Of a DNA stretch of 64,000 nucleotides, positions 36,969-48,253 are shown one piece after another. The position numbers were made by a program, and so were the translations under genes. The notes beneath the pieces are model-generated. The model had not been told where the DNA came from, did no database searches, and saw only the letters and a program-made list of their open reading frames with translations. Each line of letters starts with the position of its first letter. Position 1 is the stretch's first letter. The stretch comes from Obrimoposthia wandeli (taxonomy: Eukaryota), in contig CDROCS010000253.1 in the NCBI GenBank assembly GCA_977020255.1, forward strand, positions 3,410,001-3,474,000, given 5' to 3'.

Positions 36969-37045
36969 CGGGGTATAGCGCAGCTTGGTAGCGCGCGCGC
37001 CTGGGGGGCGTGAGGTCGACAGTTCGAATCTGTCTACTCCGACCA
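36969..37045 (+). tRNA. proL: tRNA-Pro (GGG)
   Basis: Full cloverleaf: acceptor CGGGGTA/TACTCCG, anticodon loop CTGGGGG, TTCGAAT T-loop, encoded CCA. Confidence 0.97.
37007..37038 (+). repeat. att core (tRNA 3' half), copy 1
   Basis: GGCGTGAGGTCGACAGTTCGAATCTGTCTACT, repeated at 42645-42676. Confidence 0.85.
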
Positions 37046-37057
37046 CATTAGTAAAAT

Positions 37058-37997: not shown

Positions 37998-38118
37998 TGA
38001 CGGTTTTTTTGATCCAACTTAAAATCTGACAAGGGTGTAAATACCCATGCGTTTAACACAATTTGTAAGTAGATATCCTTCGTTATCAGGTTGTGGTTTT
38101 AAGTTACTTTTTAACATG
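37998..38118 (-). pseudogene. Internally deleted copy of the tus-like gene
   Basis: MLKSNLKPQPDNEGYLLT (cf. MLKNKFKAQPDNEGDLLT) joined to DNA matching the tus 3' region (TTAAAATCTGAcAAGGGTGTAAAT, cf. 42761-42784). Confidence 0.85.
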
Positions 38119-38140
38119 TGAATATAGACTTTTATCGGTA

Positions 38141-38160
38141 TACTGTTATTATGTACAGTG
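38141..38160. promoter_or_regulatory. LexA (SOS) box, copy before tus remnant
   Basis: TACTGTTATTATGTACAGTG = CTGT-N8-ACAG. Confidence 0.8.
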
Positions 38161-38622
38161 CAGCTACTATATACTGTACTCTTACTAAGTAAATGTAAAA
38201 GATAATGAATAAAATGCACGCGGTACGAGACTTGCTAAACTTTTCTTACTTGAATCATACTGCTCTTCTTGGTTTATCACAACAATCTTATAAAAAGTGA
38301 ATTTCTCGTTTGGCATCCATTTAATGAGGAGTTTGTATAAAGGCAGCATCCGCCATTTTTATCTTCCCATACGTTTTGGTGGGTAGACCTACTACTTAAC
38401 TTCTGAAGGACAAATTTTAACTTGGTCAAGAAGTTTTAGAATCATACCCACGTCAATTTTCTCATAACCATCTAATACTTCTGCGGAACTATTTCATCCC
38501 ATTCAATAGTTTATACGGCTAGGCTATTACCCTAAATTGATTTGCAGAATGCAAAAAACGAGAAAAAACAATACAAATAAATAACAAAACGATTAAAATC
38601 AACAGCTTATTTGTTATTGCTA

Positions 38623-38639
38623 TTGGTATACTACTTGCA
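38623..38639 (+). promoter_or_regulatory. Sigma-54 (-24/-12) promoter
   Basis: TTGGTATACTACTTGCA = GG-N10-GC, about 50 bp before the large ORF. Confidence 0.65.
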
Positions 38640-38675
38640 AACCTAACTATAAGAACAAAAATATTTACGTAATAG

Positions 38676-41600
38676 TTGGAGAAAAAGATGAAAAATAATA
38701 ATGCCTATATTCGTAGTTACTATTTTGAAAATAATTATGTTAGCTCATTATCCGATGACGTTATTGGTTTAGGCGTAAAGCCTCCTCGTCGTTTAGTGAA
38801 AATAATAAATTCACTCCTGTTTATTTCAGTGATTTTTATTTTGCCTAGTGTGCAAGCCATCACACAACCTTTGTTAGATTCAGACCTAAATAACCAGTCA
38901 CTTTATGCCAGTGGCTACATTACGATGGGTGCGCGCACAACAGTTGGTGGTAATATTCAAAGTGCTACTGCGACTACACTCGCCGCCGATGCAATCGTAG
39001 GGGGTAATGTTGAGGCTGGAACCGCAGTAACTCTTGGCGCTACTGCAGCGGTTGTTGGCTATATTGAAGCGGGATCTACTGCAACATTAGGTGCAGCTGC
39101 AATTATTGATGGTTCTATTTTGGCTGGAACCACGGCTACCATAGGTGCTGGTGTTCAAATTAATGGTGAACTTATAGCCGGAACCACAGTAACAATTGAT
39201 GCAACGGTGGAAGTAGTGGGCGCTGTTTTAGCTGGAACTACTGTAACGGTTGGTGCTGGTTCAATTTTTCATGGTGATGTTGATGCCGGAACCACCACAA
39301 CCATAGGTGCTGGTGTTCAAATTAATGGGGACCTTACCGCGAACTCTCTGCTGCTACCTCCTTCTCCTCCCTTAGTAACTAATCAAGAAGCTTTACTTAC
39401 ATCGGTACAAACAACGCTGAAGGCTTTGGGAACAGGAACAGAACTCGTTTCTATTACTTTTGGGACAAACAATGAAACACTCGAAGCTGGTATCTATAGC
39501 ACTATAGATTATCTGGCGATTGCCGGAGGAAAAACCCTCACGCTTGATGGCAAGGGTGTCGACGGTACATGGATTTTTAATATTGCTAACTACCTAAGTT
39601 TTGCTATTGATGCAAAAGTAGTATTGTTAAATGTAACGGATAACAGCACCGTTATCTGGAATGTCCTAGGCGACAAAACTGGCTCCACAGGGTATACCCA
39701 ACTAGGCGCAGGCGCTGAAACCACAGGTTTTATTTTTGCTAAAGGCTTCGTCCAGACCGGTGCTAATACGGTGATAGAAGGTATAGGTAATGATTGTGGA
39801 GGGGCTTATTCAGCGACAAATTACATCGAATTTGGCGCAGATAGCATAATAGGACAGCCGGGGTGTACTAACGGTATGACCTTGTCAGTAAGCGAAGCTA
39901 TCACTGGCAAACCGTTTGCGACTTGCCCCACAGAAGCCTTTTTAATACAAGATAGCTTAGCGACGTTATATGGGGTTCAATTAGCCACGGGACAATACCT
40001 GCAACTATCAAACTCCATGGGAACGACTAATGACATTAATGCAATGGGCTTTAATACTCACGATCAATTTCTTTATGCTTGGAGTAATGAATTCGGGCAA
40101 CCCGTTCGCATTAATAGTGACTATCAAGTTACACCATTGACCACTTCAGGATTACCAGATGTATCATTTGATGTTGGTGATATTGCCATTGATAGCAATG
40201 TATATTACGTCTATAAGCCAGGTGCTTCCTACGGTTTATATGCGATATCCTTAGATTCATCGACCGCCAACTATTTGATAGCAGAATTAATTATAGATGG
40301 CAGCAGCTTAGATATAGATATCTTTGATATGGCCTTTCATCCATCTAATGGCTTTGCATACAGTGTTGATAGCCAAGGAAACCTATATCGTATTGATGTT
40401 AATAATGGCAGTGCTGAATTGATTAATAATATTGGTGAGATGGGCATTTTTGGTGCTGTTTATTTTGATGTTGATGAAAACCTTTATATTAGCCGTAACA
40501 ACGATGGTAAAATATTTAAAATAAATACCAATGAAGCCAATTCACTCGCCAATTTATTTGCTTATGGCCCAAGCTCAAGTGATAACGATGGTGCACGTTG
40601 TGCATTAGCCCCCGTTATTGCGGCAGATGCAGCAACAATAGATTTTGGGGATGCTCCTGCCTCATATGGTAGCCTCGCTGAAGATAATGGTGCTCGCCAT
40701 AGTACAGAAAATAACGCTATTTTCATGGGATCTGGTGTTGACGCCGAATTTGATAGCTTCCAATTCCCGCTAAGTGATGACGCAACAGACGGGAATGATG
40801 ATGAAGACGGTGTGGCTTTTGTCACCGGTATTGAAGTCGGTAATTCCGCAGTACTGCAACTCGTTGCATCATCATCAGCCTTTGTTAATGCATGGATAGA
40901 TTTTGACGGCAATGGTGCATTCGGACCTGATGAGAAAATTATTGATGCTCTGCAAGTAGTTCAAGGTAATAATACGATCTCTTATAACGTACCTGAATGG
41001 GCTGAGGCGGGCAGCACATGGACTCGATTTAGAATAAGTAGTACTAATGAGTTAGGTCCAACGGGTGGTGTTAGTGATGGTGAAGTGGAAGATCAGCAGG
41101 TTGATATTACAGAACAAAATGTCAGTGTACATTATTATCCTAGTGCTTCTGAGTGGGCAACCATTGCTTTTGAAGATAATTGGCCATCAACAGGCGACTA
41201 TGATTTTAATGATTTAGTCATGAATTATCGTATCAGTGAATACAGACTCGACGGTGAAGTAATTCGGATTAAACTACAAGGTCAAATAGCAGCTGCTGGC
41301 GCCTCTTACCATAACGGTTTTGCCTTTCATTTACCCGGTATTACGCGAGATACTATTGATGAAAACGCTATACGCTACACCATCAATGATCTGCCACAAA
41401 ACACCTCACCTTTAGAATCAGGACGTGATCAGGCAATAGCAATTATCACCGATGATGTGTGGAACTTTGTCAGTGCCGGTGAGAACTGTCTATATCACCG
41501 AAGTGAGTCGGGTTGTGGTTCTAAAATTCAAATGCGTTTTTCTATGACTTTACCTATGGCCAATGCGATCCCGGTTCAAGAGATGCCAGAGTTCCCATAC

Positions 41601-41951
41601 GACCCGTTTTTATTTTCTGCAGGGGGGTATCATGGCGAAGCATTTGACACGCCACCAGGCAGAGCATACGAAATACATTTACCCAATAAAGCACCGACAG
41701 AAGCTTTTAGAATCGACTTCTTTGGTCGAGAAGAAGATAGTAGCCAGCCAGAAAATCAGCGTTACTTTGTGAATGATAATGGTATGCCATGGGCGATCAA
41801 TCTTGGTGTTGAGTGGCAGTATCCTTTGGAGTACATCGATGTAATTGAGGGGTATCCATTATTTCCCAGTTTTATTTCCAATCAAGGGCTTATAGATGCC
41901 GACTGGTACACACTTGAAAATGCTAACATAAACAATATTTTTTCTGATTAA
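38676..41951 (+). CDS. Large secreted protein: expanded DUF3494/ice-binding-like beta-solenoid, DUF6923-like propeller, GEVED and LruC domains
   Basis: 8x18-aa coils; LTLDGKG...WIFNIANYL..AKVVLLN...VIWNV (DUF3494-like); DFGDAP; GEVED; AFEDNWP..GDYDFNDLV (LruC). True start probably ATG 38688 or later. Confidence 0.85.
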   Translation: MEKKMKNNNAYIRSYYFENNYVSSLSDDVIGLGVKPPRRLVKIINSLLFISVIFILPSVQAITQPLLDSDLNNQSLYASGYITMGARTTVGGNIQSATATTLAADAIVGGNVEAGTAVTLGATAAVVGYIEAGSTATLGAAAIIDGSILAGTTATIGAGVQINGELIAGTTVTIDATVEVVGAVLAGTTVTVGAGSIFHGDVDAGTTTTIGAGVQINGDLTANSLLLPPSPPLVTNQEALLTSVQTTLKALGTGTELVSITFGTNNETLEAGIYSTIDYLAIAGGKTLTLDGKGVDGTWIFNIANYLSFAIDAKVVLLNVTDNSTVIWNVLGDKTGSTGYTQLGAGAETTGFIFAKGFVQTGANTVIEGIGNDCGGAYSATNYIEFGADSIIGQPGCTNGMTLSVSEAITGKPFATCPTEAFLIQDSLATLYGVQLATGQYLQLSNSMGTTNDINAMGFNTHDQFLYAWSNEFGQPVRINSDYQVTPLTTSGLPDVSFDVGDIAIDSNVYYVYKPGASYGLYAISLDSSTANYLIAELIIDGSSLDIDIFDMAFHPSNGFAYSVDSQGNLYRIDVNNGSAELINNIGEMGIFGAVYFDVDENLYISRNNDGKIFKINTNEANSLANLFAYGPSSSDNDGARCALAPVIAADAATIDFGDAPASYGSLAEDNGARHSTENNAIFMGSGVDAEFDSFQFPLSDDATDGNDDEDGVAFVTGIEVGNSAVLQLVASSSAFVNAWIDFDGNGAFGPDEKIIDALQVVQGNNTISYNVPEWAEAGSTWTRFRISSTNELGPTGGVSDGEVEDQQVDITEQNVSVHYYPSASEWATIAFEDNWPSTGDYDFNDLVMNYRISEYRLDGEVIRIKLQGQIAAAGASYHNGFAFHLPGITRDTIDENAIRYTINDLPQNTSPLESGRDQAIAIITDDVWNFVSAGENCLYHRSESGCGSKIQMRFSMTLPMANAIPVQEMPEFPYDPFLFSAGGYHGEAFDTPPGRAYEIHLPNKAPTEAFRIDFFGREEDSSQPENQRYFVNDNGMPWAINLGVEWQYPLEYIDVIEGYPLFPSFISNQGLIDADWYTLENANINNIFSD
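38907..39338 (+). repeat. Eight tandem 54-bp (18-aa) coding repeats
   Basis: Consensus AGTTxTxGAxxxxxGxxx; 29 bp identical at 39138 and 39300. Confidence 0.9.
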
Positions 41952-41962
41952 AGAGGTGACGT

Positions 41963-42478
41963 ATGAATAAGCTATATAGTTTTATTTTATTGAGTACTTT
42001 GTTAACAGCGTGTGGCGGTGGTTCAGAAAGTAGCATACAAGAACCGACAGTAGATGAAAGTCCGCCAAGTAATGTTTTATTAGATCCAGTTCAAAGCCAA
42101 CCAGCGGTAACTGAATTTAGGTTCGAGGAGAATAAACCTTTGGAAACTGTGGCTGTTATAGAAAGTGCAGCAAAAACAAGCAGTGAGATAGACGTACCTG
42201 ATGGCTTTTCACTGAGTAGTGAGCGCACGTTTAACCTAAAGATTCTTCGGATAGAAGATGATAACCAAGCAGCCTATTTATCGCTGTGCAGTGATTATCA
42301 GCACCATAATGACGGCAGTTATACTATTAATTATGATAGCTGTTTACTCAGAACTTCATTGAATGATATTAATTACGAGTCGTTAGTTACTGTTACCAAT
42401 GACACCGAGGGCTTAGTTGTCGCACTGTGGTTTATGGATGTAACTAAAAAGCCCATCATCACGAGTTGGCGTTTTTAA
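41963..42478 (+). CDS. Lipoprotein partner of the LruC-domain protein
   Basis: Lipobox LLTAC-GGG; 11 bp downstream of the large ORF. Confidence 0.8.
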   Translation: MNKLYSFILLSTLLTACGGGSESSIQEPTVDESPPSNVLLDPVQSQPAVTEFRFEENKPLETVAVIESAAKTSSEIDVPDGFSLSSERTFNLKILRIEDDNQAAYLSLCSDYQHHNDGSYTINYDSCLLRTSLNDINYESLVTVTNDTEGLVVALWFMDVTKKPIITSWRF

Positions 42479-42644
42479 TGTCTAAATTATAAAAGTAAAT
42501 TAGAGTATCGATAGCCAAATATTAACAGTTAAATTAGTGTTACGATTTAAAAATATTCAAATGTTATACCCACTTATTTTCAATATAAAATAACCCTAAA
42601 CTTATGAAGTTTAAGGTTATTATATTCACCTGAATGAGACTGGT

Positions 42645-42676
42645 GGCGTGAGGGCGACAGTTCGAATCTGTCTACT
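42645..42676 (+). repeat. att core (tRNA 3' half), copy 2
   Basis: 31/32 identical to 37007-37038. Confidence 0.85.
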
Positions 42677-43607
42677 TCACCCCCACTAACTGTAAAAATT
42701 TATCTAACATCTCTTTATTACTTTTAATAAAAGGTTTTTTTTGATCTTTATCGCCGACATTAAAATCTGATAAGGGTGTAAATTTCGGTACCGCATTGTT
42801 TTCCTGCCCCATTAATATAAATGGAATGGTGGCATTATGCTTGTTACGTTTCTTCTCTCCATCCTTAATTAAATTAAACTCTATTGTTGGCAATAACCTA
42901 AATTGTTTTAACTTCTGTATTTTCTTATACTGTCCAGAGGTTATCTTGCTAATAGTGATATTTAACCGCGCTTTCCACTCGGTAGCACTGAACTCTATTG
43001 GTGGTACACTTTTCTTTTTTTCTACATAAAGCACCGCATCATCAAGCGAATACATTTGAGGCACCGGTCGACTAACCCAATTAAACCAAACGTTGTTTAC
43101 GTGGTCTGTTTTTATTTGAATTTTTCGGTAGAGCTGCTCTGTCATAACACCAGAAAAAGCGCGATGAATAAACTCATGACGTTGATGTTTATCTCTGTTG
43201 TGACGAATGGTGTTAGCCAAGCCATCTTTTAAGGTATTAATAGACGTTACCAGTGCCAAGACAGTCTCTTTCTCTTCATTGACAATGACAAAACCAGGTA
43301 AGCGGTTAACAAACATTGTAGAACTGGTTAGTGGCGCGTAAAAATCTTTCCACGCGTTTAACACCGTTTGTAATTCGGTCCATTGCGTCAAGGCGTTAAC
43401 AGATAAGTGTTTCACGCCAGCAACGATACAGTTTTTTTCTTCCTCTTTAGCTATTCGTTCAATCTCATAGCCAACAAAATAGGGGTTTTGTTTACTTATC
43501 ATCTCGATCAATAACGTGGTTTGAGTAACAAGCTTACTCATTAACTGAGTTACGGTAAGTAGATCTCCTTCGTTATCAGGTTGTGCTTTAAATTTATTTT
43601 TTAACAT
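42672..43607 (-). CDS. tus: Tus-like DNA replication terminus site-binding protein
   Basis: SSTMFVNRLPG, RHEFIHRAFSGVMTEQLYRKI, VWFNWVSR, EWKARL and HNATIPFI align with recalled E. coli Tus blocks; 311 aa versus 309. Confidence 0.8.
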   Translation of the reverse strand: MLKNKFKAQPDNEGDLLTVTQLMSKLVTQTTLLIEMISKQNPYFVGYEIERIAKEEEKNCIVAGVKHLSVNALTQWTELQTVLNAWKDFYAPLTSSTMFVNRLPGFVIVNEEKETVLALVTSINTLKDGLANTIRHNRDKHQRHEFIHRAFSGVMTEQLYRKIQIKTDHVNNVWFNWVSRPVPQMYSLDDAVLYVEKKKSVPPIEFSATEWKARLNITISKITSGQYKKIQKLKQFRLLPTIEFNLIKDGEKKRNKHNATIPFILMGQENNAVPKFTPLSDFNVGDKDQKKPFIKSNKEMLDKFLQLVGVK

Positions 43608-43630
43608 GAAAATATATCCTTTTACTGGGA

Positions 43631-43650
43631 TACTGTTATTATATACAGTA
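43631..43650. promoter_or_regulatory. LexA (SOS) box upstream of tus
   Basis: TACTGTTATTATATACAGTA, 24 bp upstream of the ATG. Confidence 0.88.
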
Positions 43651-43974
43651 TTATTACTAAGTAAATGTAAAAGATAGTGAATAAAATACGTGCCCTACTG
43701 TCTTGCCAAACTTTTCTTGCTTGAATGACACTGTTCTTCTTGGTTTATCACAACAATTTTATAAATAAAGAATTTCTCGTTTGGTAACTACTTAATGAGG
43801 TGTTTGTATAAAGGCAGCGCCCACCATTTTTACCTTTCCATATACCATGGTGGGTAGACCTACTATTTAAAGCAATTAATATCTTCGGGGCCATAATCAA
43901 AATACGGCTAAATTCTCTATTGAGTGTTTCTGATTTTTACAATCAAACAATAACAACTAAAAAAGACAACGTAA

Positions 43975-45114
43975 CTATCTTATATGACGTTGAAAAATAT
44001 GAAAGTCTTCGAGTGCTTTCGTTGCAGAAAATACAGTCCAACCATGCTGTTTGACAAGTATTTCGTTTCTCATATCAATGAGTACAGCAACTTTTTTACG
44101 TGGCCAACACAAATCGAATGATACTGTATTACGGTCATACTGAACCGCTACACCTAACTCCCCTACTGGTACCCTAGAGCTTTGGCATTTAAGAATAAGC
44201 CCTTCTAACGCCGTATCGGCACACTCTATCAACTGAGGATAGGTTGTATTATCAAACTTATGCTGCTCTCTTCGAAACCGGTTTATGGTAATTACGTCAA
44301 CAGGTTTTATATACAAATGCCCGTGATGCGGCTGCTTCTTGTGACAATCGCAACAGAGTGCACGCAAATTATTGCTGTCGTTATTTTTTTTGACTCCATC
44401 AATATGATGTACATGTAGCAATTTTTTTTCAGAATCGAGATCAACACCACATTGTTGGCAAATATAGTTAACTTCATTTTTTATTCTGGATGAAATAGCG
44501 GGCCAGTCTGACGAGTAAGTAACTGAGTCTTCATTTATTTTAGAGTCAGGCAAGCTTTTAAAGTAAGAACTGTAAGTTTCAAAAAATTTAACAAAACTAA
44601 AGCTTTCAAAAATAATGTTTCTATCTGGCTTTGTTTTAAGCGCATAACCTTGATAATTAAGGATACGTAAACAGTTCATGCAAGTCCCTAAATGAGCTTT
44701 ATCCTTTAGTTCTTTATGTGTTTCAGGGTCGACACCATAAACGGGTACATACCCACTCATTTCATTGGTTACCTGATAGCGTGGGAAACGCCCTGTTTCT
44801 CGCATTAACTGTAAAGTGTTACATTCAGCTATATGTATGCGTCGCCCTTGTTTTCCATCCTGAATGACATGCCGAATATCATCACCTTGATCCGGAATAT
44901 AAAGCATAACCTGACGCCCTTTATAACTAAGAACACCGTTACTATTTTCAATTTCGCCTATATCAATATCTTTACCTAACTCTTGTCCATCTCTAAGAGC
45001 GGCATCGATAGGATCAATGTCCTTAAAGACAAACCCTAACTCAAAATCAGCCTCTTCTGCCCCCATCAGTTGAACAGCGTGGCGAAGTTGACCAAAGTTA
45101 ACTGTTAACTTCAT
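43975..45114 (-). CDS. zorE: Zorya type II HNH nuclease ZorE
   Basis: CQQCG...LHVHHIDGVKKNN...NLRALCCDCH; follows zorB with GTGA/ATGA-type overlap. Confidence 0.8.
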   Translation of the reverse strand: MKLTVNFGQLRHAVQLMGAEEADFELGFVFKDIDPIDAALRDGQELGKDIDIGEIENSNGVLSYKGRQVMLYIPDQGDDIRHVIQDGKQGRRIHIAECNTLQLMRETGRFPRYQVTNEMSGYVPVYGVDPETHKELKDKAHLGTCMNCLRILNYQGYALKTKPDRNIIFESFSFVKFFETYSSYFKSLPDSKINEDSVTYSSDWPAISSRIKNEVNYICQQCGVDLDSEKKLLHVHHIDGVKKNNDSNNLRALCCDCHKKQPHHGHLYIKPVDVITINRFRREQHKFDNTTYPQLIECADTALEGLILKCQSSRVPVGELGVAVQYDRNTVSFDLCWPRKKVAVLIDMRNEILVKQHGWTVFSATKALEDFHIFQRHIR

Positions 45115-45815
45115 TCTTCAGCTTCCAAAATCCGTTTTATTTGAATATCAGCATTAGTGATCGCACGAAAGGATACCCGTCGTGATTTTTCAGCATCTTC
45201 GGTGCCAGCTTCATTCAGTATTAACCGTGACGATGAAAAGCCAACAGCGGCAATGTTACGCTTGATCCAATCAGTTTCACCTGGCACCAAACTGTATAAA
45301 TATGACAACACAGAACGAGTTCTACCTTGCGACAAACGCATATTATTAAAATATGCCTCACTGTCTGTACTAGTTAGGTTCCATGCACTACTGGTATGCC
45401 CTTCAATCCTAACTTCATTTAATGATTCACGGAACGGCTTAAGGACAGTTAAGTACCTTGGGAAAAAATCATTCAAAATATTGGTAAAGGTTGGCTTTAG
45501 TGCAATTTCACCATTATCAAAAAGTACATCTGGTGAATTAAAATTAAACGCAAGGGTATCTTTATCAATTGCTGCACCCCATGTAGGCAAGTCGTTCTTA
45601 AACTCTTCATCTAAGGCATTATAAATAGCAACTTGATTTTCTTGAAACGCTATCGCCACATTTTTAATTTTTTCATTTTCTTTTATCGTATGACGCATAA
45701 AAACAATAGCAATAAACAAAAAAACCATCATCAAACCAGCCATAAGATCAGAAATTGTTAACCAATGCTCTCCTGACTCTTCATGGCTTTTGCTACTCCC
45801 AAATAATGCACTCAT
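45111..45815 (-). CDS. zorB: Zorya ZorB (MotB/OmpA-like)
   Basis: WLTISDLMAGLMMVF TM with Asp; IEGHTSS, LSQGR, SRRVSF. Confidence 0.9.
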   Translation of the reverse strand: MSALFGSSKSHEESGEHWLTISDLMAGLMMVFLFIAIVFMRHTIKENEKIKNVAIAFQENQVAIYNALDEEFKNDLPTWGAAIDKDTLAFNFNSPDVLFDNGEIALKPTFTNILNDFFPRYLTVLKPFRESLNEVRIEGHTSSAWNLTSTDSEAYFNNMRLSQGRTRSVLSYLYSLVPGETDWIKRNIAAVGFSSSRLILNEAGTEDAEKSRRVSFRAITNADIQIKRILEAEE

Positions 45816-47587
45816 TAGGCACTTACCTGTTCTTTAACTATTTGCTGCATAGCGAGGGTTAAGTTTTTATAATCTCGAGTGAATTGGCCGGCAATTTGCG
45901 CCAGCGAAGTACCCATTTCATTCATAACTCGGTTGATTTCTTGCTGCATTGCTTGATCGATTATACCAACTTGTTTTTCGACAGCTTCGCCAGTTAACCC
46001 TACTTGTTGTTTTATTTTTTCTTCCATGGCATCAAAAGTGCGCTGTGCTTGGCTCACCTGTTGTTTCGCGGCTTCTTCCATCATGGTTTTCATTTGATCT
46101 TGCAGTTGTTCGCTAGACTTAACAAAGGTATCTCTCACTTCTTTAGTATCTATTGTAAGATTCTGATTAGCGTCCTTCATTGTTGTATTCATTATCTTAG
46201 CGTCGTCAACTAGCTTAGCGATCATGTCACTCATGTTGTTGTTTAGATCAGTTACTGCAACGTCTAAAGTTTTCTGAATAACCTCTGTCTGACTTTGTAA
46301 GTAATCAGAGGTAGTTTGTAAGCTAGCATTAGTACGGGCTGAATTGTCTGTGAATTCATTACTCGCCATATCAATGTTTTTACCAATAATTTCAGAGCTT
46401 TCGATCAATTTATCCGCAACAACATTAACGCTTTTTTCTGATTTTTTAACAAAATTTTCAATTAAATTATCGGCTGCCGTTAATGTTTCTTTGATAAATA
46501 CATCTGATTCAGCTACAACTTTTTCATAATGAGCACTAGCCACGCCAACTGCATTGGTAATATCTGTTACCGTATTTTCAACTTGTTGACGTATTTCTGG
46601 CACCGCTTCAACCGCACGATCACGCATATCTTTAAAGGCTTCTAAATGGCTTTCTAACTCACTTATTTGATGTTGATTAACTTCCATAACAACTTGTAAG
46701 TCATTCATGGTTTGAGGAATAACCTTCGACTGCTCGCTGATGTGTGCTACCGAGTTTTCTGTCAACGTAATAGCTTGAACACCATGTTCATATTGAAGGT
46801 GCATCTGCTCTAGTTGTAGTTTATAATTTTCTTGCCAATCAACAAGTTTAATAACAGCAGCATTAAGTTGCTTGAAATTTTCGCCAAACTGCTCAGTTAG
46901 ATTATTATTGAAATCGGTTATTACCTGCTTCAATGCTTCTATTACTTGCTCCGTTGCTGACTTGGACAAGGTATCAGCAAAGTCTTGCAGTTTTATCCAT
47001 AACTTGTCCGAAAACAGTGCAAAATTATCGAATTGTTTAGCTGATAGTTCTTCGGTTAACTTTTTATTAAGCTTGGCATTATCGTTCATATCGCTGCGCA
47101 TTAGTTTTAGTAAACCAAACAACGTTGACTCATCATTACCCGCAATTGCTTCTTTCAGTGCTTGTGTTTCTTTAACTTGGCTTTGCATTGCCGATAAAAT
47201 TTGCTCTGGCGAAGCGCTAGTCACTTCATCAGGCTGTGATTTCGGCTTTAATAACGGCGTTGTTAAAAGGCTCTTAAACAACAAAGAAGAAAGCATACCA
47301 GCTAGACTAGTAATAAATGCCGTTTTAAGACCATCTAATAGCATGGTAATACTGTCATCAATTTTTGTATGATCAAAATCGAGCAAGCCAATAACAATGC
47401 CAACAAAAGTACCAAAAATACCTAGGGTCGTTAACAACGTTGGGGTGTAGTGAACAAAGTCTCCTGCTTTATTTAGCTTAGATAAAACGCTAGAGCCGAT
47501 GAACACAAGGATCATAATGAAAATAATAAAACTAGTAACTGTTTCAGGGTTAAGTCCTCTTAAAAGTCCTTCTAAAAAACCGCTCAT
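45815..47587 (-). CDS. zorA: Zorya ZorA (MotA-like with long helical tail)
   Basis: TLGIFGTFVGI, GLKTAFITSLAG, FGENFKQLN.AV, about 450-aa helical tail. Confidence 0.9.
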   Translation of the reverse strand: MSGFLEGLLRGLNPETVTSFIIFIMILVFIGSSVLSKLNKAGDFVHYTPTLLTTLGIFGTFVGIVIGLLDFDHTKIDDSITMLLDGLKTAFITSLAGMLSSLLFKSLLTTPLLKPKSQPDEVTSASPEQILSAMQSQVKETQALKEAIAGNDESTLFGLLKLMRSDMNDNAKLNKKLTEELSAKQFDNFALFSDKLWIKLQDFADTLSKSATEQVIEALKQVITDFNNNLTEQFGENFKQLNAAVIKLVDWQENYKLQLEQMHLQYEHGVQAITLTENSVAHISEQSKVIPQTMNDLQVVMEVNQHQISELESHLEAFKDMRDRAVEAVPEIRQQVENTVTDITNAVGVASAHYEKVVAESDVFIKETLTAADNLIENFVKKSEKSVNVVADKLIESSEIIGKNIDMASNEFTDNSARTNASLQTTSDYLQSQTEVIQKTLDVAVTDLNNNMSDMIAKLVDDAKIMNTTMKDANQNLTIDTKEVRDTFVKSSEQLQDQMKTMMEEAAKQQVSQAQRTFDAMEEKIKQQVGLTGEAVEKQVGIIDQAMQQEINRVMNEMGTSLAQIAGQFTRDYKNLTLAMQQIVKEQVSA

Positions 47588-47738: not shown

Positions 47739-47895
47739 GTAAACGAACGATAGTGTGTAAGTTACATTCTTCGGTTAACAGCTTTTTGATTTTGGTTTTA
47801 ACACCTTCACCAAATAAAGTACCGTCGGGCAGTACTACCGCTGCACGGCCGCCATTTCTGTCTGTTGTTGGTGACGCCAGCACTTCGATAAGATT
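47731..47895 (-). pseudogene. hsdM: HsdM internal remnant
   Basis: [41 protein letters not shown]. Confidence 0.88.
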
Positions 47896-48253
47896 CAAGT
47901 TGAGCCGGATTAGTCTTGTCATGAAAAATAAAACCATCGCCGTTTGAAGCAAAGATAAAAGGCACTTCGAGCAAACGGGCATAATCAAGCCCTTGTTGCA
48001 TACCCTTGCCTATTTCGTGTTTATTCGCCTTAGCTTCAATTACCGCTAGTGGCATATTCGGTTTATGGTAAAGCACGATATCAGCAGATTTAACCGTGGT
48101 ACGCATGGCTATAGGGCCGCGTACAATCACTTTACCATCACGTAGCTTCACTTCTTGACGTATTTGTTTCATCAAATCCCAACCGGCACTTTGTACCGCG
48201 GGCATGATGAATTTGGTGATTATATCGGTTTCGGAGAACTTCTTTTTGTCCAT
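47896..48253 (-). pseudogene. hsdR: HsdR (EcoEI-like) N-terminal remnant
   Basis: [44 protein letters not shown]. Confidence 0.88.

What the first reader, a model, noticed from the sequence alone, without database searches (positions are those of the whole stretch)
38676..42478. Ice-binding-like domain extended by eight Thr-rich coils and fused to propeller-GEVED-LruC domains
Seen: eight tandem 18-aa repeats with aligned Thr (AGTTxT) directly N-terminal to a DUF3494-like segment. Repeats 5 and 8 share 29 identical bp, indicating recent expansion. Known: DUF3494 proteins are beta-solenoid ice binders with about 18-residue coils, regular Thr rows form ice-binding faces, and longer solenoids bind more strongly. 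Inference: an elongated ice adhesin or antifreeze displayed at the surface with the adjacent lipoprotein, acquired on a tRNA island.
Basis: partly seen in the sequence, partly recalled or inferred. Interest (0 to 1): 0.7.

Follow-up and report, generated by a model that had tools for sequence, protein, structure and literature searches.

The report
Elongated ice-binding solenoid on LruC surface protein
A Colwellia gene encodes a long, threonine-lined ice-binding-type solenoid joined to a widespread marine surface protein that always has a small lipoprotein partner; this kind of protein is already described from sea-ice bacteria, so it is a good example, not a new kind.

Summary
Window 38688-41951 (+) encodes a 1087-aa exported protein with eight 18-residue Thr/Gly/Ala-rich repeats. 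These are followed by a partial PF11999 match, a DUF6923 propeller, GEVED, weak DUF4114 and an LruC/DUF4842 domain. A 171-aa lipoprotein gene sits 11 nt downstream.

AlphaFold2 folds residues 60-401 as one rigid body (pLDDT 96.3, pTM 0.93). It matches solved DUF3494 ice-binding proteins at Z 20-22. The repeats align residue for residue with the mutationally mapped ice-binding B-face strands of AnpIBP. Their Thr at repeat position 13 is kept in 64-98% of 48 distant relatives.

This is a "non-canonical DUF3494" as described by Raymond 2024, where a 9-coil member bound ice. The PF11999+DUF4842 architecture was already reported from Arctic sea ice by Winder 2023.

What I add:
- The C-terminal 690 aa plus the lipoprotein form a conserved two-gene module across marine Gammaproteobacteria, including warm-water Aliivibrio fischeri.
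- Only Colwellia, Glaciecola, Paraglaciecola and Brumicola copies carry the solenoid head.
- The 29-bp identity is a lineage-specific conversion patch, not a recent expansion; repeat number is fixed among orthologues.
- The gene pair is bracketed by tRNA-Pro 3' repeats, with no integrase.

Ice binding and surface display remain untested.

The parts
38688..41951 (+). Gene for the 1087-aa multidomain protein (ncDUF3494 solenoid, DUF6923 propeller, GEVED, DUF4114, LruC/DUF4842)
   Evidence: ORF and translation; GGAG before the ATG; Pfam and NCBIfam hits; orthologues at 75-92% identity
38688..38858 (+). N-terminal 57 residues: a 33-aa poorly conserved extension, then a signal peptide (RR..K, hydrophobic 39-52, VQA|I cleavage-type site)
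   Evidence: Read from the sequence. The alignment shows the MxKNNxY start and the SAQA-type site conserved, with the stretch between variable but always open. pLDDT below 50. There was no signal-peptide predictor, so this is inference.
38886..39371 (+). N-side coils of the solenoid: a degenerate unit (residues 67-84) plus eight 18-aa repeats (85-228) with a Thr ladder at repeat positions 10, 11 and 13
   Evidence: periodicity 18; 0 of 5000 shuffles reach it; three strands per 18 residues, pLDDT 97-99; position-13 Thr/Ser in 64-98% of 48 relatives; alignment to AnpIBP B-face strands
39138..39166 (+). First copy of the 29-bp identical stretch (unit 4/5 junction, TIGAGVQING)
   Evidence: Orthologues read GADAV or GASAI here, so this is a lineage-specific conversion patch.
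39300..39328 (+). Second copy of the 29-bp identical stretch (unit 7/8 junction); probable donor
   Evidence: GAGVQ at this junction is shared by all orthologues.
39342..39425 (+). Pro-rich strap (LLLPPSPPLV) and 13-residue alpha helix (234-246) that carry the chain back along the solenoid
   Evidence: ordered, pLDDT 94-97, with a helix at model residues 175-187. That it spans the stack is my inference from the DUF3494 topology described in PMC11645318.
39426..39872 (+). C-side canonical DUF3494 coils (about five), ending with the nearly invariant Cys370 and Cys393
   Evidence: PF11999 profile 76-191; strands; conserved Cys; Cys positions
39957..40604 (+). DUF6923 beta-propeller-type repeat domain (residues 424-639)
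   Evidence: E 7.6e-26; strand pattern with pLDDT 70-87; absent from the 851-aa relatives
40884..41099 (+). GEVED domain (residues 733-804)
   Evidence: 48.5 bits, cut-off 24.4
41157..41912 (+). LruC domain / DUF4842 (residues 824-1075), overlapping a weak DUF4114 match at 808-846
   Evidence: 260.5 bits; 200 bits; weak relative 3OQQ, a putative lipoprotein
41963..42478 (+). 171-aa lipoprotein (lipobox LLTAC, Gly at +2, Gly/Ser linker), co-oriented, 11 nt after the stop, with its own AGAGG ribosome-binding site
   Evidence: A homologous lipoprotein gene lies directly downstream in 41 of the 42 related loci examined. No Pfam or NCBIfam hit.
42589..42621 (.). 15-bp-stem hairpin after the operon, terminator-like
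   Evidence: a consensus match only
36969..37045 (+). tRNA-Pro (GGG), left border of the variable segment
42642..42688 (+). Direct repeat of the tRNA-Pro 3' half (47 nt, 85% identical to 37004-37050), right border of the segment that holds endA, the solenoid gene and the lipoprotein gene
   Evidence: family D5

Best explanation
The gene encodes a Sec-exported ice-adhesin-type protein.

Its N-terminal 340 residues form a single right-handed triangular beta-solenoid of about 13 coils, of the non-canonical DUF3494 kind. Eight 18-residue coils lie before the alpha helix, where canonical proteins have one, and about five canonical coils lie after it. One face carries a ladder of Thr: repeat position 13 in eight successive coils, flanked here by Thr at positions 10 and 11. 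That face corresponds to the B-face ice-binding site of solved DUF3494 proteins. By analogy with them it should order water and adsorb to ice.

This head was grafted onto the N-terminus of an older, habitat-independent two-gene module of marine Gammaproteobacteria: a propeller-GEVED-LruC/DUF4842 protein plus a small outer-membrane-type lipoprotein. That module probably holds the protein at the cell envelope, so the cell or its matrix would be tied to ice.

Shown: the domain composition, the fold model and its matches, the homology of the Thr strand to a mapped ice-binding site, the conserved gene pair, and the restriction of the fusion to sea-ice genera.

Inferred: ice binding itself, outer-membrane or surface location, and the protein-lipoprotein interaction.
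For: Fold:
- The module model has pLDDT 96.3 and pTM 0.93.
- VIA-align gives Z 20-22 at rmsd 2.2-2.8 A over 197-209 residues of nearly whole DUF3494 ice-binding proteins, including Colwellia ColAFP (3WP9); each alignment runs from model residue 1 or 2 to residues 334-341.
- Long-solenoid tapirins align over 249-259 residues.
- All Foldseek hits with E below 1e-3 are DUF3494 ice-binding proteins.

Ice-binding face:
- phmmer aligns the repeat strands STATLG, TTATIG and TTVTID to AnpIBP SSATLG, ALIAAQ and SAVTLD.
- These are the B-face ice-binding-site strands of AnpIBP, where S153Y and T156Y cut activity to 17% (PMC7277481).
- Position-13 Thr/Ser is kept in 64-98% of 48 relatives at 30-55% identity.

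Literature:
- Non-canonical DUF3494 proteins carry extra coils N-terminal of the helix. A recombinant 9-coil member bound ice at about 2 ug/ml. Colwellia and Glaciecola members are described (PMC11645318).
- PF11999+PF16130 proteins make up 5.1% of Arctic sea-ice ice-binding-protein abundance. 51 of 75 are Alteromonadales, 88% come from interior ice, and solenoids of up to 14 coils were modelled (PMC9957290).

Distribution:
- In species genomes the N-terminal module is present only in Colwellia, Glaciecola and Paraglaciecola MAGs, one MAG labelled Flavobacteriales, and Brumicola pallidula.
- The C-terminal 690 aa occur at 40-56% identity in Aliivibrio fischeri, Alteromonas, Pseudoalteromonas, Thalassotalea and others.

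Partner: a homologous lipoprotein lies directly downstream in 41 of 42 loci.

The same genome also has a stand-alone PEP-CTERM paralogue, 57% identical.
Against: - No assay exists for this protein or for any LruC-fused member.
- The B-face of the C-side coils is irregular and carries Tyr302 and Tyr336.
- DUF3494 proteins also occur in ice-free habitats (PMC11645318). The same fold binds cellulose in tapirins (Z 17.6-18.8) and forms the pilus protein ComZ (Z 16).
- No outer-membrane translocation system is evident beside the gene.
- The C-terminal third is poorly modelled, with pLDDT below 50 for residues 998-1087.
- The habitat of this Colwellia is not known to me; run labels were coded.
Confidence: 0.62

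Rival explanations
1. The solenoid binds ice, but the protein is released. It would act as a secreted recrystallisation inhibitor or brine-pocket shaper, and the C-terminal domains would bind exopolymer or serve export rather than tether it to the cell.
For: The signal peptide has a peptidase-I-type site and there is no lipobox or further membrane helix. Most characterised DUF3494 proteins are secreted (PMC11645318). In one close relative the gene pair lies behind an exopolysaccharide synthesis cluster.
Against: A lipoprotein partner is strictly conserved with the LruC half. LruC/DUF4842 proteins of Leptospira and Bacteroides are envelope lipoproteins (PMC8280789; 3OQQ). The same head is also fused to MshQ-type DUF6701 cell-surface proteins.
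Confidence: 0.18
2. The solenoid is not an ice binder here. It would be an adhesin head or rigid stalk for another ordered surface, such as a polysaccharide, a diatom surface or a mineral, like the structurally similar tapirins.
For: Tapirin C-terminal domains and ComZ match at Z 16-19 over 230-259 residues. DUF3494 proteins exist in ice-free habitats, where they may bind other substrates. The base protein without the head occurs in warm-water bacteria, so the C-terminal half has a function unrelated to ice.
Against: The head is added only in sea-ice genera. The Thr row is conserved on the strand homologous to a mapped ice-binding site. A 9-coil family member bound ice. Solved ice-binding proteins match better than tapirins do (Z 20-22 against 17.6-18.8).
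Confidence: 0.15
3. The protein stays in the periplasm or on the inner membrane, with the long N-terminus acting as an uncleaved anchor, and protects the envelope against internal ice or has a structural role.
For: There is an unusual 33-residue extension before the hydrophobic segment. No secretion genes lie nearby. Weak bactofilin-like matches were found.
Against: Stand-alone relatives have ordinary short signal peptides aligned to the same segment. The AQA-type cleavage site is conserved. The bactofilin score, 23.2 bits, is below the 27.9 cut-off.
Confidence: 0.05

Closest known systems
[quoted passage not shown] Aquiluna protein
   Same: [quoted passage not shown] Only partial recognition by the PF11999 profile. 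A central Thr/Ser row on the putative ice-binding face. A signal peptide. Occurrence in Colwellia and Glaciecola. 440 representative clusters match the module, many of them about 400 aa with PEP-CTERM tails.
   Different: Here the solenoid is the head of a 1087-aa protein with propeller, GEVED and LruC domains instead of a PEP-CTERM tail or DUF6701. This clade also has Thr at repeat positions 10 and 11, where relatives mostly have Gly or Ala. This member has not been assayed.
PF11999 + PF16130 (DUF3494 + DUF4842) architecture from Central Arctic sea-ice metagenomes (Winder et al. 2023, PMC9957290)
   Same: The same domain pair, mostly Alteromonadales, with long solenoids of up to 14 coils in the models; very probably the same protein family.
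   Different: In the passages I read, that paper reports the architecture and its abundance only. I did not see the propeller or GEVED parts, the lipoprotein partner or the head-less base protein discussed there.
Canonical DUF3494 ice-binding proteins with solved structures (ColAFP 3WP9, AnpIBP 7BWX, FfIBP 4NU2, IBPv 5UYT, SfIBP_1 6BG8)
   Same: The fold (Z 20-22, rmsd 2.2-3.0 A, about 200 residues), and coil strands homologous to the B-face ice-binding site.
   Different: Canonical proteins have six coils, one of them before the helix. This one has about 13, eight of them before the helix. Sequence identity is 16-27%.
Bacterial ice adhesins: MpIBP of Marinomonas primoryensis and SfIBP_1 of Shewanella frigidimarina (as cited in PMC9957290)
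   Same: The proposed logic is the same: an ice-binding domain at the far end of a large cell-attached protein.
   Different: MpIBP is an RTX adhesin with a different ice-binding fold and type I secretion. SfIBP_1 uses tandem Ig-like domains and is itself a lipoprotein (from my own knowledge). Here attachment would go through an LruC domain and a separate lipoprotein, which is untested.
Propeller-GEVED-LruC proteins with a downstream lipoprotein in marine Gammaproteobacteria (for example Aliivibrio fischeri ES114 chromosome II, locus L048)
   Same: Residues 397-1087 match at 40-56% identity, and the lipoprotein partner is homologous.
   Different: They lack the solenoid head, and their function is unknown.

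Membership tests
DUF3494 / Pfam PF11999 Ice_binding | Profile match above the gathering score | tested here: met
   63.8 bits on the whole protein and 72.1 on the module, against a cut-off of 28.7. Only profile positions 76-191 of 208 are covered.
DUF3494 / Pfam PF11999 Ice_binding | Right-handed triangular beta-solenoid braced by an alpha helix | tested here: met
   AlphaFold2 model with pLDDT 96.3. Z 20-22 and rmsd 2.2-2.8 A over 197-207 residues to ten or more solved DUF3494 proteins. This rests on a prediction, not a structure.
DUF3494 / Pfam PF11999 Ice_binding | Discontinuous coil order (first and last coils adjacent) | tested here: inconclusive
   Alignments to whole six-coil proteins start at model residue 1 or 2 and end at 334-341 with about 200 aligned residues, and pTM is 0.93. 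Both fit this topology, but no coordinates were returned for inspection.
DUF3494 / Pfam PF11999 Ice_binding | Ice-binding activity | not testable with these tools
   Needs recombinant protein and ice assays.
ncDUF3494 (Raymond 2024) | More than one coil between the N-terminus and the helix | tested here: met
   Eight B-face strands before the helix at residues 234-246.
ncDUF3494 (Raymond 2024) | Aligned outward Thr/Ser row on the B face | tested here: met
   Position-13 Thr in units 0-7. It aligns to AnpIBP T156 and T192 of the mapped ice-binding site and is conserved at 64-98%. The outward orientation is inferred from the in/out pattern and from homology, not measured.
ncDUF3494 (Raymond 2024) | Common accessory features: PEP-CTERM tail or DUF6701 | tested here: not met
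   Neither is present here; LruC/DUF4842 takes their place. These features are frequent rather than obligatory (58% of members and 10 members in PMC11645318). The paralogue on the same contig has PEP-CTERM.
LruC domain (TIGR04456) / DUF4842 (PF16130) | Profile match above the cut-off over the full profile | tested here: met
   260.5 bits against 36, profile 1-243 of 243. 200 bits against 22, profile 2-208 of 208.
Bactofilin (PF04519) | Profile match above the gathering score | tested here: not met
   23.2-24.2 bits against a cut-off of 27.9. The resemblance reflects the similar 18-residue coils.
Left-handed beta-helix acyltransferases (hexapeptide repeat) | Family score and superposable fold | tested here: not met
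   NeuD scores 24.3 bits against 160.8 and GlmU 15.2 against 725. Structural rows for GlmU and LpxA have Z of about 9-10 with rmsd 11-12 A.
tRNA-borne genomic island | tRNA gene at one border and a direct repeat of its 3' end at the other | tested here: met
   tRNA-Pro at 36969-37045. 47 nt at 42642-42688 are 85% identical to 37004-37050.
tRNA-borne genomic island | Integrase or other mobility gene inside | tested here: not met
   Between the repeats lie only endonuclease I, a tus remnant, the solenoid gene and the lipoprotein gene.
tRNA-borne genomic island | Absent from, or placed elsewhere in, related genomes | tested here: met
   None of the window's neighbours (YejM, EndA, Tus and others) occurs within 6-8 kb of the orthologues in ten related loci. 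One relative has an exopolysaccharide cluster and fdhD beside the pair.
tRNA-borne genomic island | Deviant base composition | tested here: not met
   GC is 0.40-0.41 across the gene, against 0.32-0.41 in the rest of the window.

The most novel reading that the evidence does not exclude
Sea-ice Alteromonadales built a third type of bacterial ice adhesin by grafting a 13-coil ncDUF3494 head onto a pre-existing two-gene envelope module of unknown function that is widespread in marine Gammaproteobacteria. That module is a propeller-GEVED-LruC protein plus a cognate outer-membrane lipoprotein. The lipoprotein would be the anchor that displays the LruC protein, which would give both the LruC/DUF4842 family and its partner a first testable role.
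Probability: 0.35. Interest if true: 0.55.

Novelty: new member of a known kind. Interest (0 to 1): 0.4.

Why it matters
This is a clean, full-length, genome-anchored example of the elongated DUF3494 proteins that are abundant in sea ice but almost untested. The comparison offers a natural experiment: the same protein exists with the solenoid and the propeller (1087 aa), with the solenoid only (851 aa), and without the solenoid (about 700 aa). It also links the uncharacterised LruC/DUF4842 family to an obligatory lipoprotein partner. If the Thr-rich 13-coil face binds ice more strongly than six-coil proteins do, it would be a useful scaffold for studying how activity depends on length. None of this changes current understanding of ice-binding proteins.

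Tried and rejected
- Tandem Repeats Finder found no DNA tandem array. The repeats are old at the DNA level.
- 'Recent expansion' is rejected. Repeat number is constant in all close orthologues, and contigs of four public runs show no insertion or deletion across 38600-39900, though coverage was patchy.
- Bactofilin and left-handed acyltransferase readings of the repeats are rejected, on sub-threshold scores and rmsd of 11-12 A.
- Reading the Pro-rich stretch LLLPPSPP as a flexible interdomain linker is rejected. It is ordered in the model (pLDDT 94-97), and the two halves fold as one body.
- The whole-protein model (pLDDT 63.3, pTM 0.41) was too poor beyond residue 400 to search the C-terminal folds.
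- The supplement of PMC11645318 was not available, so I could not check whether this exact protein is in its table.
- The ESM Atlas look-up of the lipoprotein gave only unnamed clusters and a weak DUF4841 lead, score 0.82.
- The sequencing-run search returned coded labels and no RNA run, so neither habitat nor expression could be established.
- Flatness and Thr spacing could not be measured because no coordinates are returned.


Full report
**What is there.**

Window 38688-41951 (+) is an open frame of 1087 codons starting at an ATG preceded by GGAG. The TTG at 38676 quoted in the finding is only the first possible start.

- Ice_binding PF11999: residues 244-365, profile positions 77-191 of 208, 63.8 bits.
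- GEVED: residues 733-804.
- DUF4114: weak, residues 808-846.
- DUF4842: residues 857-1074.
- LruC_dom TIGR04456: residues 824-1075.

The 'propeller' is DUF6923, residues 424-639, with E 7.6e-26 when that part is scanned alone.

Eleven bases after the stop begins a 171-aa ORF with the lipobox LLTAC and Gly at +2.

**The repeats.**

Residues 85-228 are eight 18-residue units, preceded by a degenerate one at 67-84. Identity at offset 18 is 0.43, against about 0.10 at other offsets. No shuffle out of 5000 reaches the observed mean unit identity.

The consensus is x-[VI]-x-G-x-[IVL]-x-A-G-T-T-x-T-[IL]-G-A-x-x. Position 13 is Thr in seven units, position 10 is Thr/Ser in all eight, and position 11 is Thr in five.

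At the DNA level the repeats are old. Tandem Repeats Finder reports nothing, and the only long internal match is two 160-nt blocks, three units apart, at 74% identity.

The 29 identical bases are real, at 39138 and 39300. They do not show recent expansion. Fourteen full-length orthologues at 75-92% identity, and the 851-aa relatives, all align without gaps through the eight units.

Only this genome reads GAGVQ at the unit 4/5 junction. Even the 92%-identical relative reads GADAV there, while GAGVQ at the unit 7/8 junction is universal. The simplest reading is a short intragenic conversion patch in this lineage.

More distant relatives do differ in coil number: P0047 and P0048 have fewer and P0049 has more. 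Contigs of four public runs show no insertion or deletion here, with patchy coverage.

**Fold.**

With 48 diverse relatives from an exhaustive representative search (440 clusters at E up to 1e-3; alignment A2), AlphaFold2 models residues 60-401 at pLDDT 96.3 and pTM 0.93.
- Each 18-residue unit contributes three short strands.
- A 13-residue helix (residues 234-246) follows the Pro-rich segment, which is itself ordered.
- About five longer coils follow the helix.

Every Foldseek hit with E below 1e-3 is a DUF3494 ice-binding protein. VIA-align gives Z 20-22 at rmsd 2.2-2.8 A over 197-207 residues, nearly the whole of each six-coil target. ColAFP from Colwellia is among them. The aligned range starts at model residue 1 or 2 and ends at residues 334-341.

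The long-solenoid tapirins align over 249-259 residues at Z 17.6-18.8, and ComZ aligns at Z 16.

So the repeats and the PF11999 part form one continuous solenoid with the DUF3494 helix. There are about 13 coils, eight before the helix instead of one. I could not measure flatness or Thr spacing because the tools return no coordinates.

**Which face carries the Thr ladder.**

phmmer against PDB sequences aligns the repeats to the last coils of AnpIBP:
- STATLG, TTATIG and TTVTID fall on SSATLG, ALIAAQ and SAVTLD.
- NYLSFA of the C-side falls on TTLVTY.

[quoted passage not shown] It also shows that S153Y and T156Y reduce thermal hysteresis to 17% (PMC7277481).

Repeat positions 10, 11 and 13 therefore correspond to outward ice-binding-site positions, and position 13 corresponds to T156. 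Across 48 relatives at 30-55% identity, position 13 is Thr/Ser in 64-98% of sequences in each of units 0-7. Positions 10 and 11 are mostly Gly/Ala in those relatives, so the T-T-x-T pattern is a speciality of this clade.

**It is a published kind.**

Raymond 2024 (PMC11645318) defined non-canonical DUF3494 proteins by just these features:
- partial recognition by the profile;
- a central Thr/Ser row;
- bacteria from icy habitats, including Colwellia and Glaciecola;
- PEP-CTERM tails or DUF6701 fusions.

That paper also showed ice-binding by a recombinant 9-coil member down to about 2 ug/ml.

Winder et al. 2023 (PMC9957290) reported PF11999+PF16130 as the third most abundant ice-binding-protein architecture in Central Arctic samples, at 5.1%. 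Of the classified members, 51 of 75 are Alteromonadales and 88% come from interior ice. They modelled solenoids of up to 14 coils.

My searches recover the same picture:
- stand-alone relatives of about 400 aa with PEP-CTERM tails;
- MshQ/DUF6701 fusions;
- a 389-aa PEP-CTERM paralogue on the same contig, 57% identical.

**What the comparison adds.**

A scan of species genomes shows that residues about 397-1087 (propeller, GEVED, LruC) form a protein of about 690 aa. It is found at 40-56% identity in many marine Gammaproteobacteria, including Aliivibrio fischeri ES114, Alteromonas, Pseudoalteromonas, Thalassotalea, Marinibactrum, Psychrobium and Colwellia psychrerythraea.

The solenoid head is present only in Colwellia, Glaciecola and Paraglaciecola MAGs, one MAG labelled Flavobacteriales, and Brumicola pallidula DSM 14239. 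From my own knowledge, that strain is an Antarctic sea-ice isolate.

Within the close clade there are three architectures sharing the same N-terminal leader:
- head + propeller + GEVED-LruC, about 1087 aa;
- head + GEVED-LruC, 851 aa;
- propeller + GEVED-LruC, 703-760 aa.

In 41 of the 42 loci examined, a lipoprotein gene homologous to the 171-aa ORF follows directly. The remaining locus ends too early to tell. The lipoprotein is thus a partner of the LruC half, not of the ice-binding part.

LruC/DUF4842 proteins studied in Leptospira are outer-membrane lipoproteins that bind host matrix (PMC8280789). The only solved relative by sequence is a Bacteroides putative lipoprotein, 3OQQ.

**Genomic setting.**

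The 3' half of tRNA-Pro (37004-37050) is repeated at 42642-42688 (47 nt, 85%), just past the lipoprotein gene and a hairpin. Between the two copies lie endonuclease I, a remnant of tus with its LexA-box intergenic region (38019-38399, compared with 42760-43870), the solenoid gene and the lipoprotein gene.

There is no integrase in that segment, and GC content is unremarkable. None of the window's neighbours lies near the orthologues elsewhere. One relative has an exopolysaccharide cluster and fdhD beside the pair.

'Acquired at a tRNA site' is therefore reasonable, but the element is a decayed one.

**Most likely working.**

Steps shown:
- the architecture;
- a confident solenoid model of the DUF3494 type;
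- homology of the Thr strand to a mapped ice-binding site;
- family-wide conservation of the Thr row;
- restriction of the head to sea-ice genera;
- the obligatory lipoprotein neighbour.

Steps inferred:
- Sec export, with cleavage after Ala57;
- adsorption of the Thr-lined B face to ice;
- retention at the outer membrane through LruC and the lipoprotein, making the protein an ice adhesin rather than a free antifreeze.

Rivals are a released ice-binding protein, a non-ice adhesin or stalk (the tapirin and ComZ resemblance), and a periplasmic role.

**Verdict.**

The thing belongs to a kind already described in two papers, one with an activity assay on a relative. Interest is moderate: it is a good experimental handle, not a surprise.

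Noticed in passing
whole assembly G000; the window is G000:C253:3410001-3474000: The assembly has 1.35 Gb in 6912 contigs, yet the window lies on a contig of more than 3.47 Mb whose genes are bacterial and closest to Colwellia MAGs. This looks like a bacterial chromosome inside a large, probably eukaryotic or mixed, assembly.
   Followed up: no
G000:C253:2733475-2734644 (L007 1432-2601): A stand-alone 389-aa paralogue of the solenoid module: 57% identical, eight coils, a short signal peptide and a PEP-CTERM tail. It lies behind a TPR protein gene.
   Followed up: partly
G000:C163:84577-85821 (L008, L009): A 1597-aa open frame with two canonical full-length DUF3494 domains on another contig of the same assembly. 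Its organism is unknown.
   Followed up: no
window 38019-38399 compared with 42760-43870: A decayed copy of tus (start and end only) with its upstream region, including the CTGT-N8-ACAG LexA-type box. It is 84-96% identical to the intact tus locus 5.5 kb downstream. Together with the repeated tRNA-Pro 3' half, this points to two stacked insertions.
   Followed up: partly
window 43975-47587 (-): Three co-oriented genes: a MotA/ExbB-like protein with a long helical tail (589 aa), an OmpA-like protein (233 aa) and an HNH endonuclease (378 aa). This is a Zorya-like defence trio, followed by an HSDR_N-type fragment at 47807-48253.
   Followed up: no
window 38688-38786 (residues 1-33): An N-terminal extension before the signal peptide. 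It is open in every orthologue and begins with a conserved MxKNNxY, but is otherwise very variable. Stand-alone relatives start at the position of residue 35-37. Its purpose is unknown.
   Followed up: partly
L012-L053 (42 loci from species genomes): A propeller-GEVED-LruC gene followed directly by a homologous lipoprotein gene of 146-323 aa is a conserved pair across marine Gammaproteobacteria, including Aliivibrio fischeri ES114 chromosome II. I found no paper on it.
   Followed up: partly
P0049-P0052; L004 1867-5349: The same solenoid module, or a bactofilin-like one, heads MshQ-type DUF6701 proteins of about 1000-1160 aa. The locus I looked at has no pilus genes within 10 kb downstream.
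   Followed up: partly
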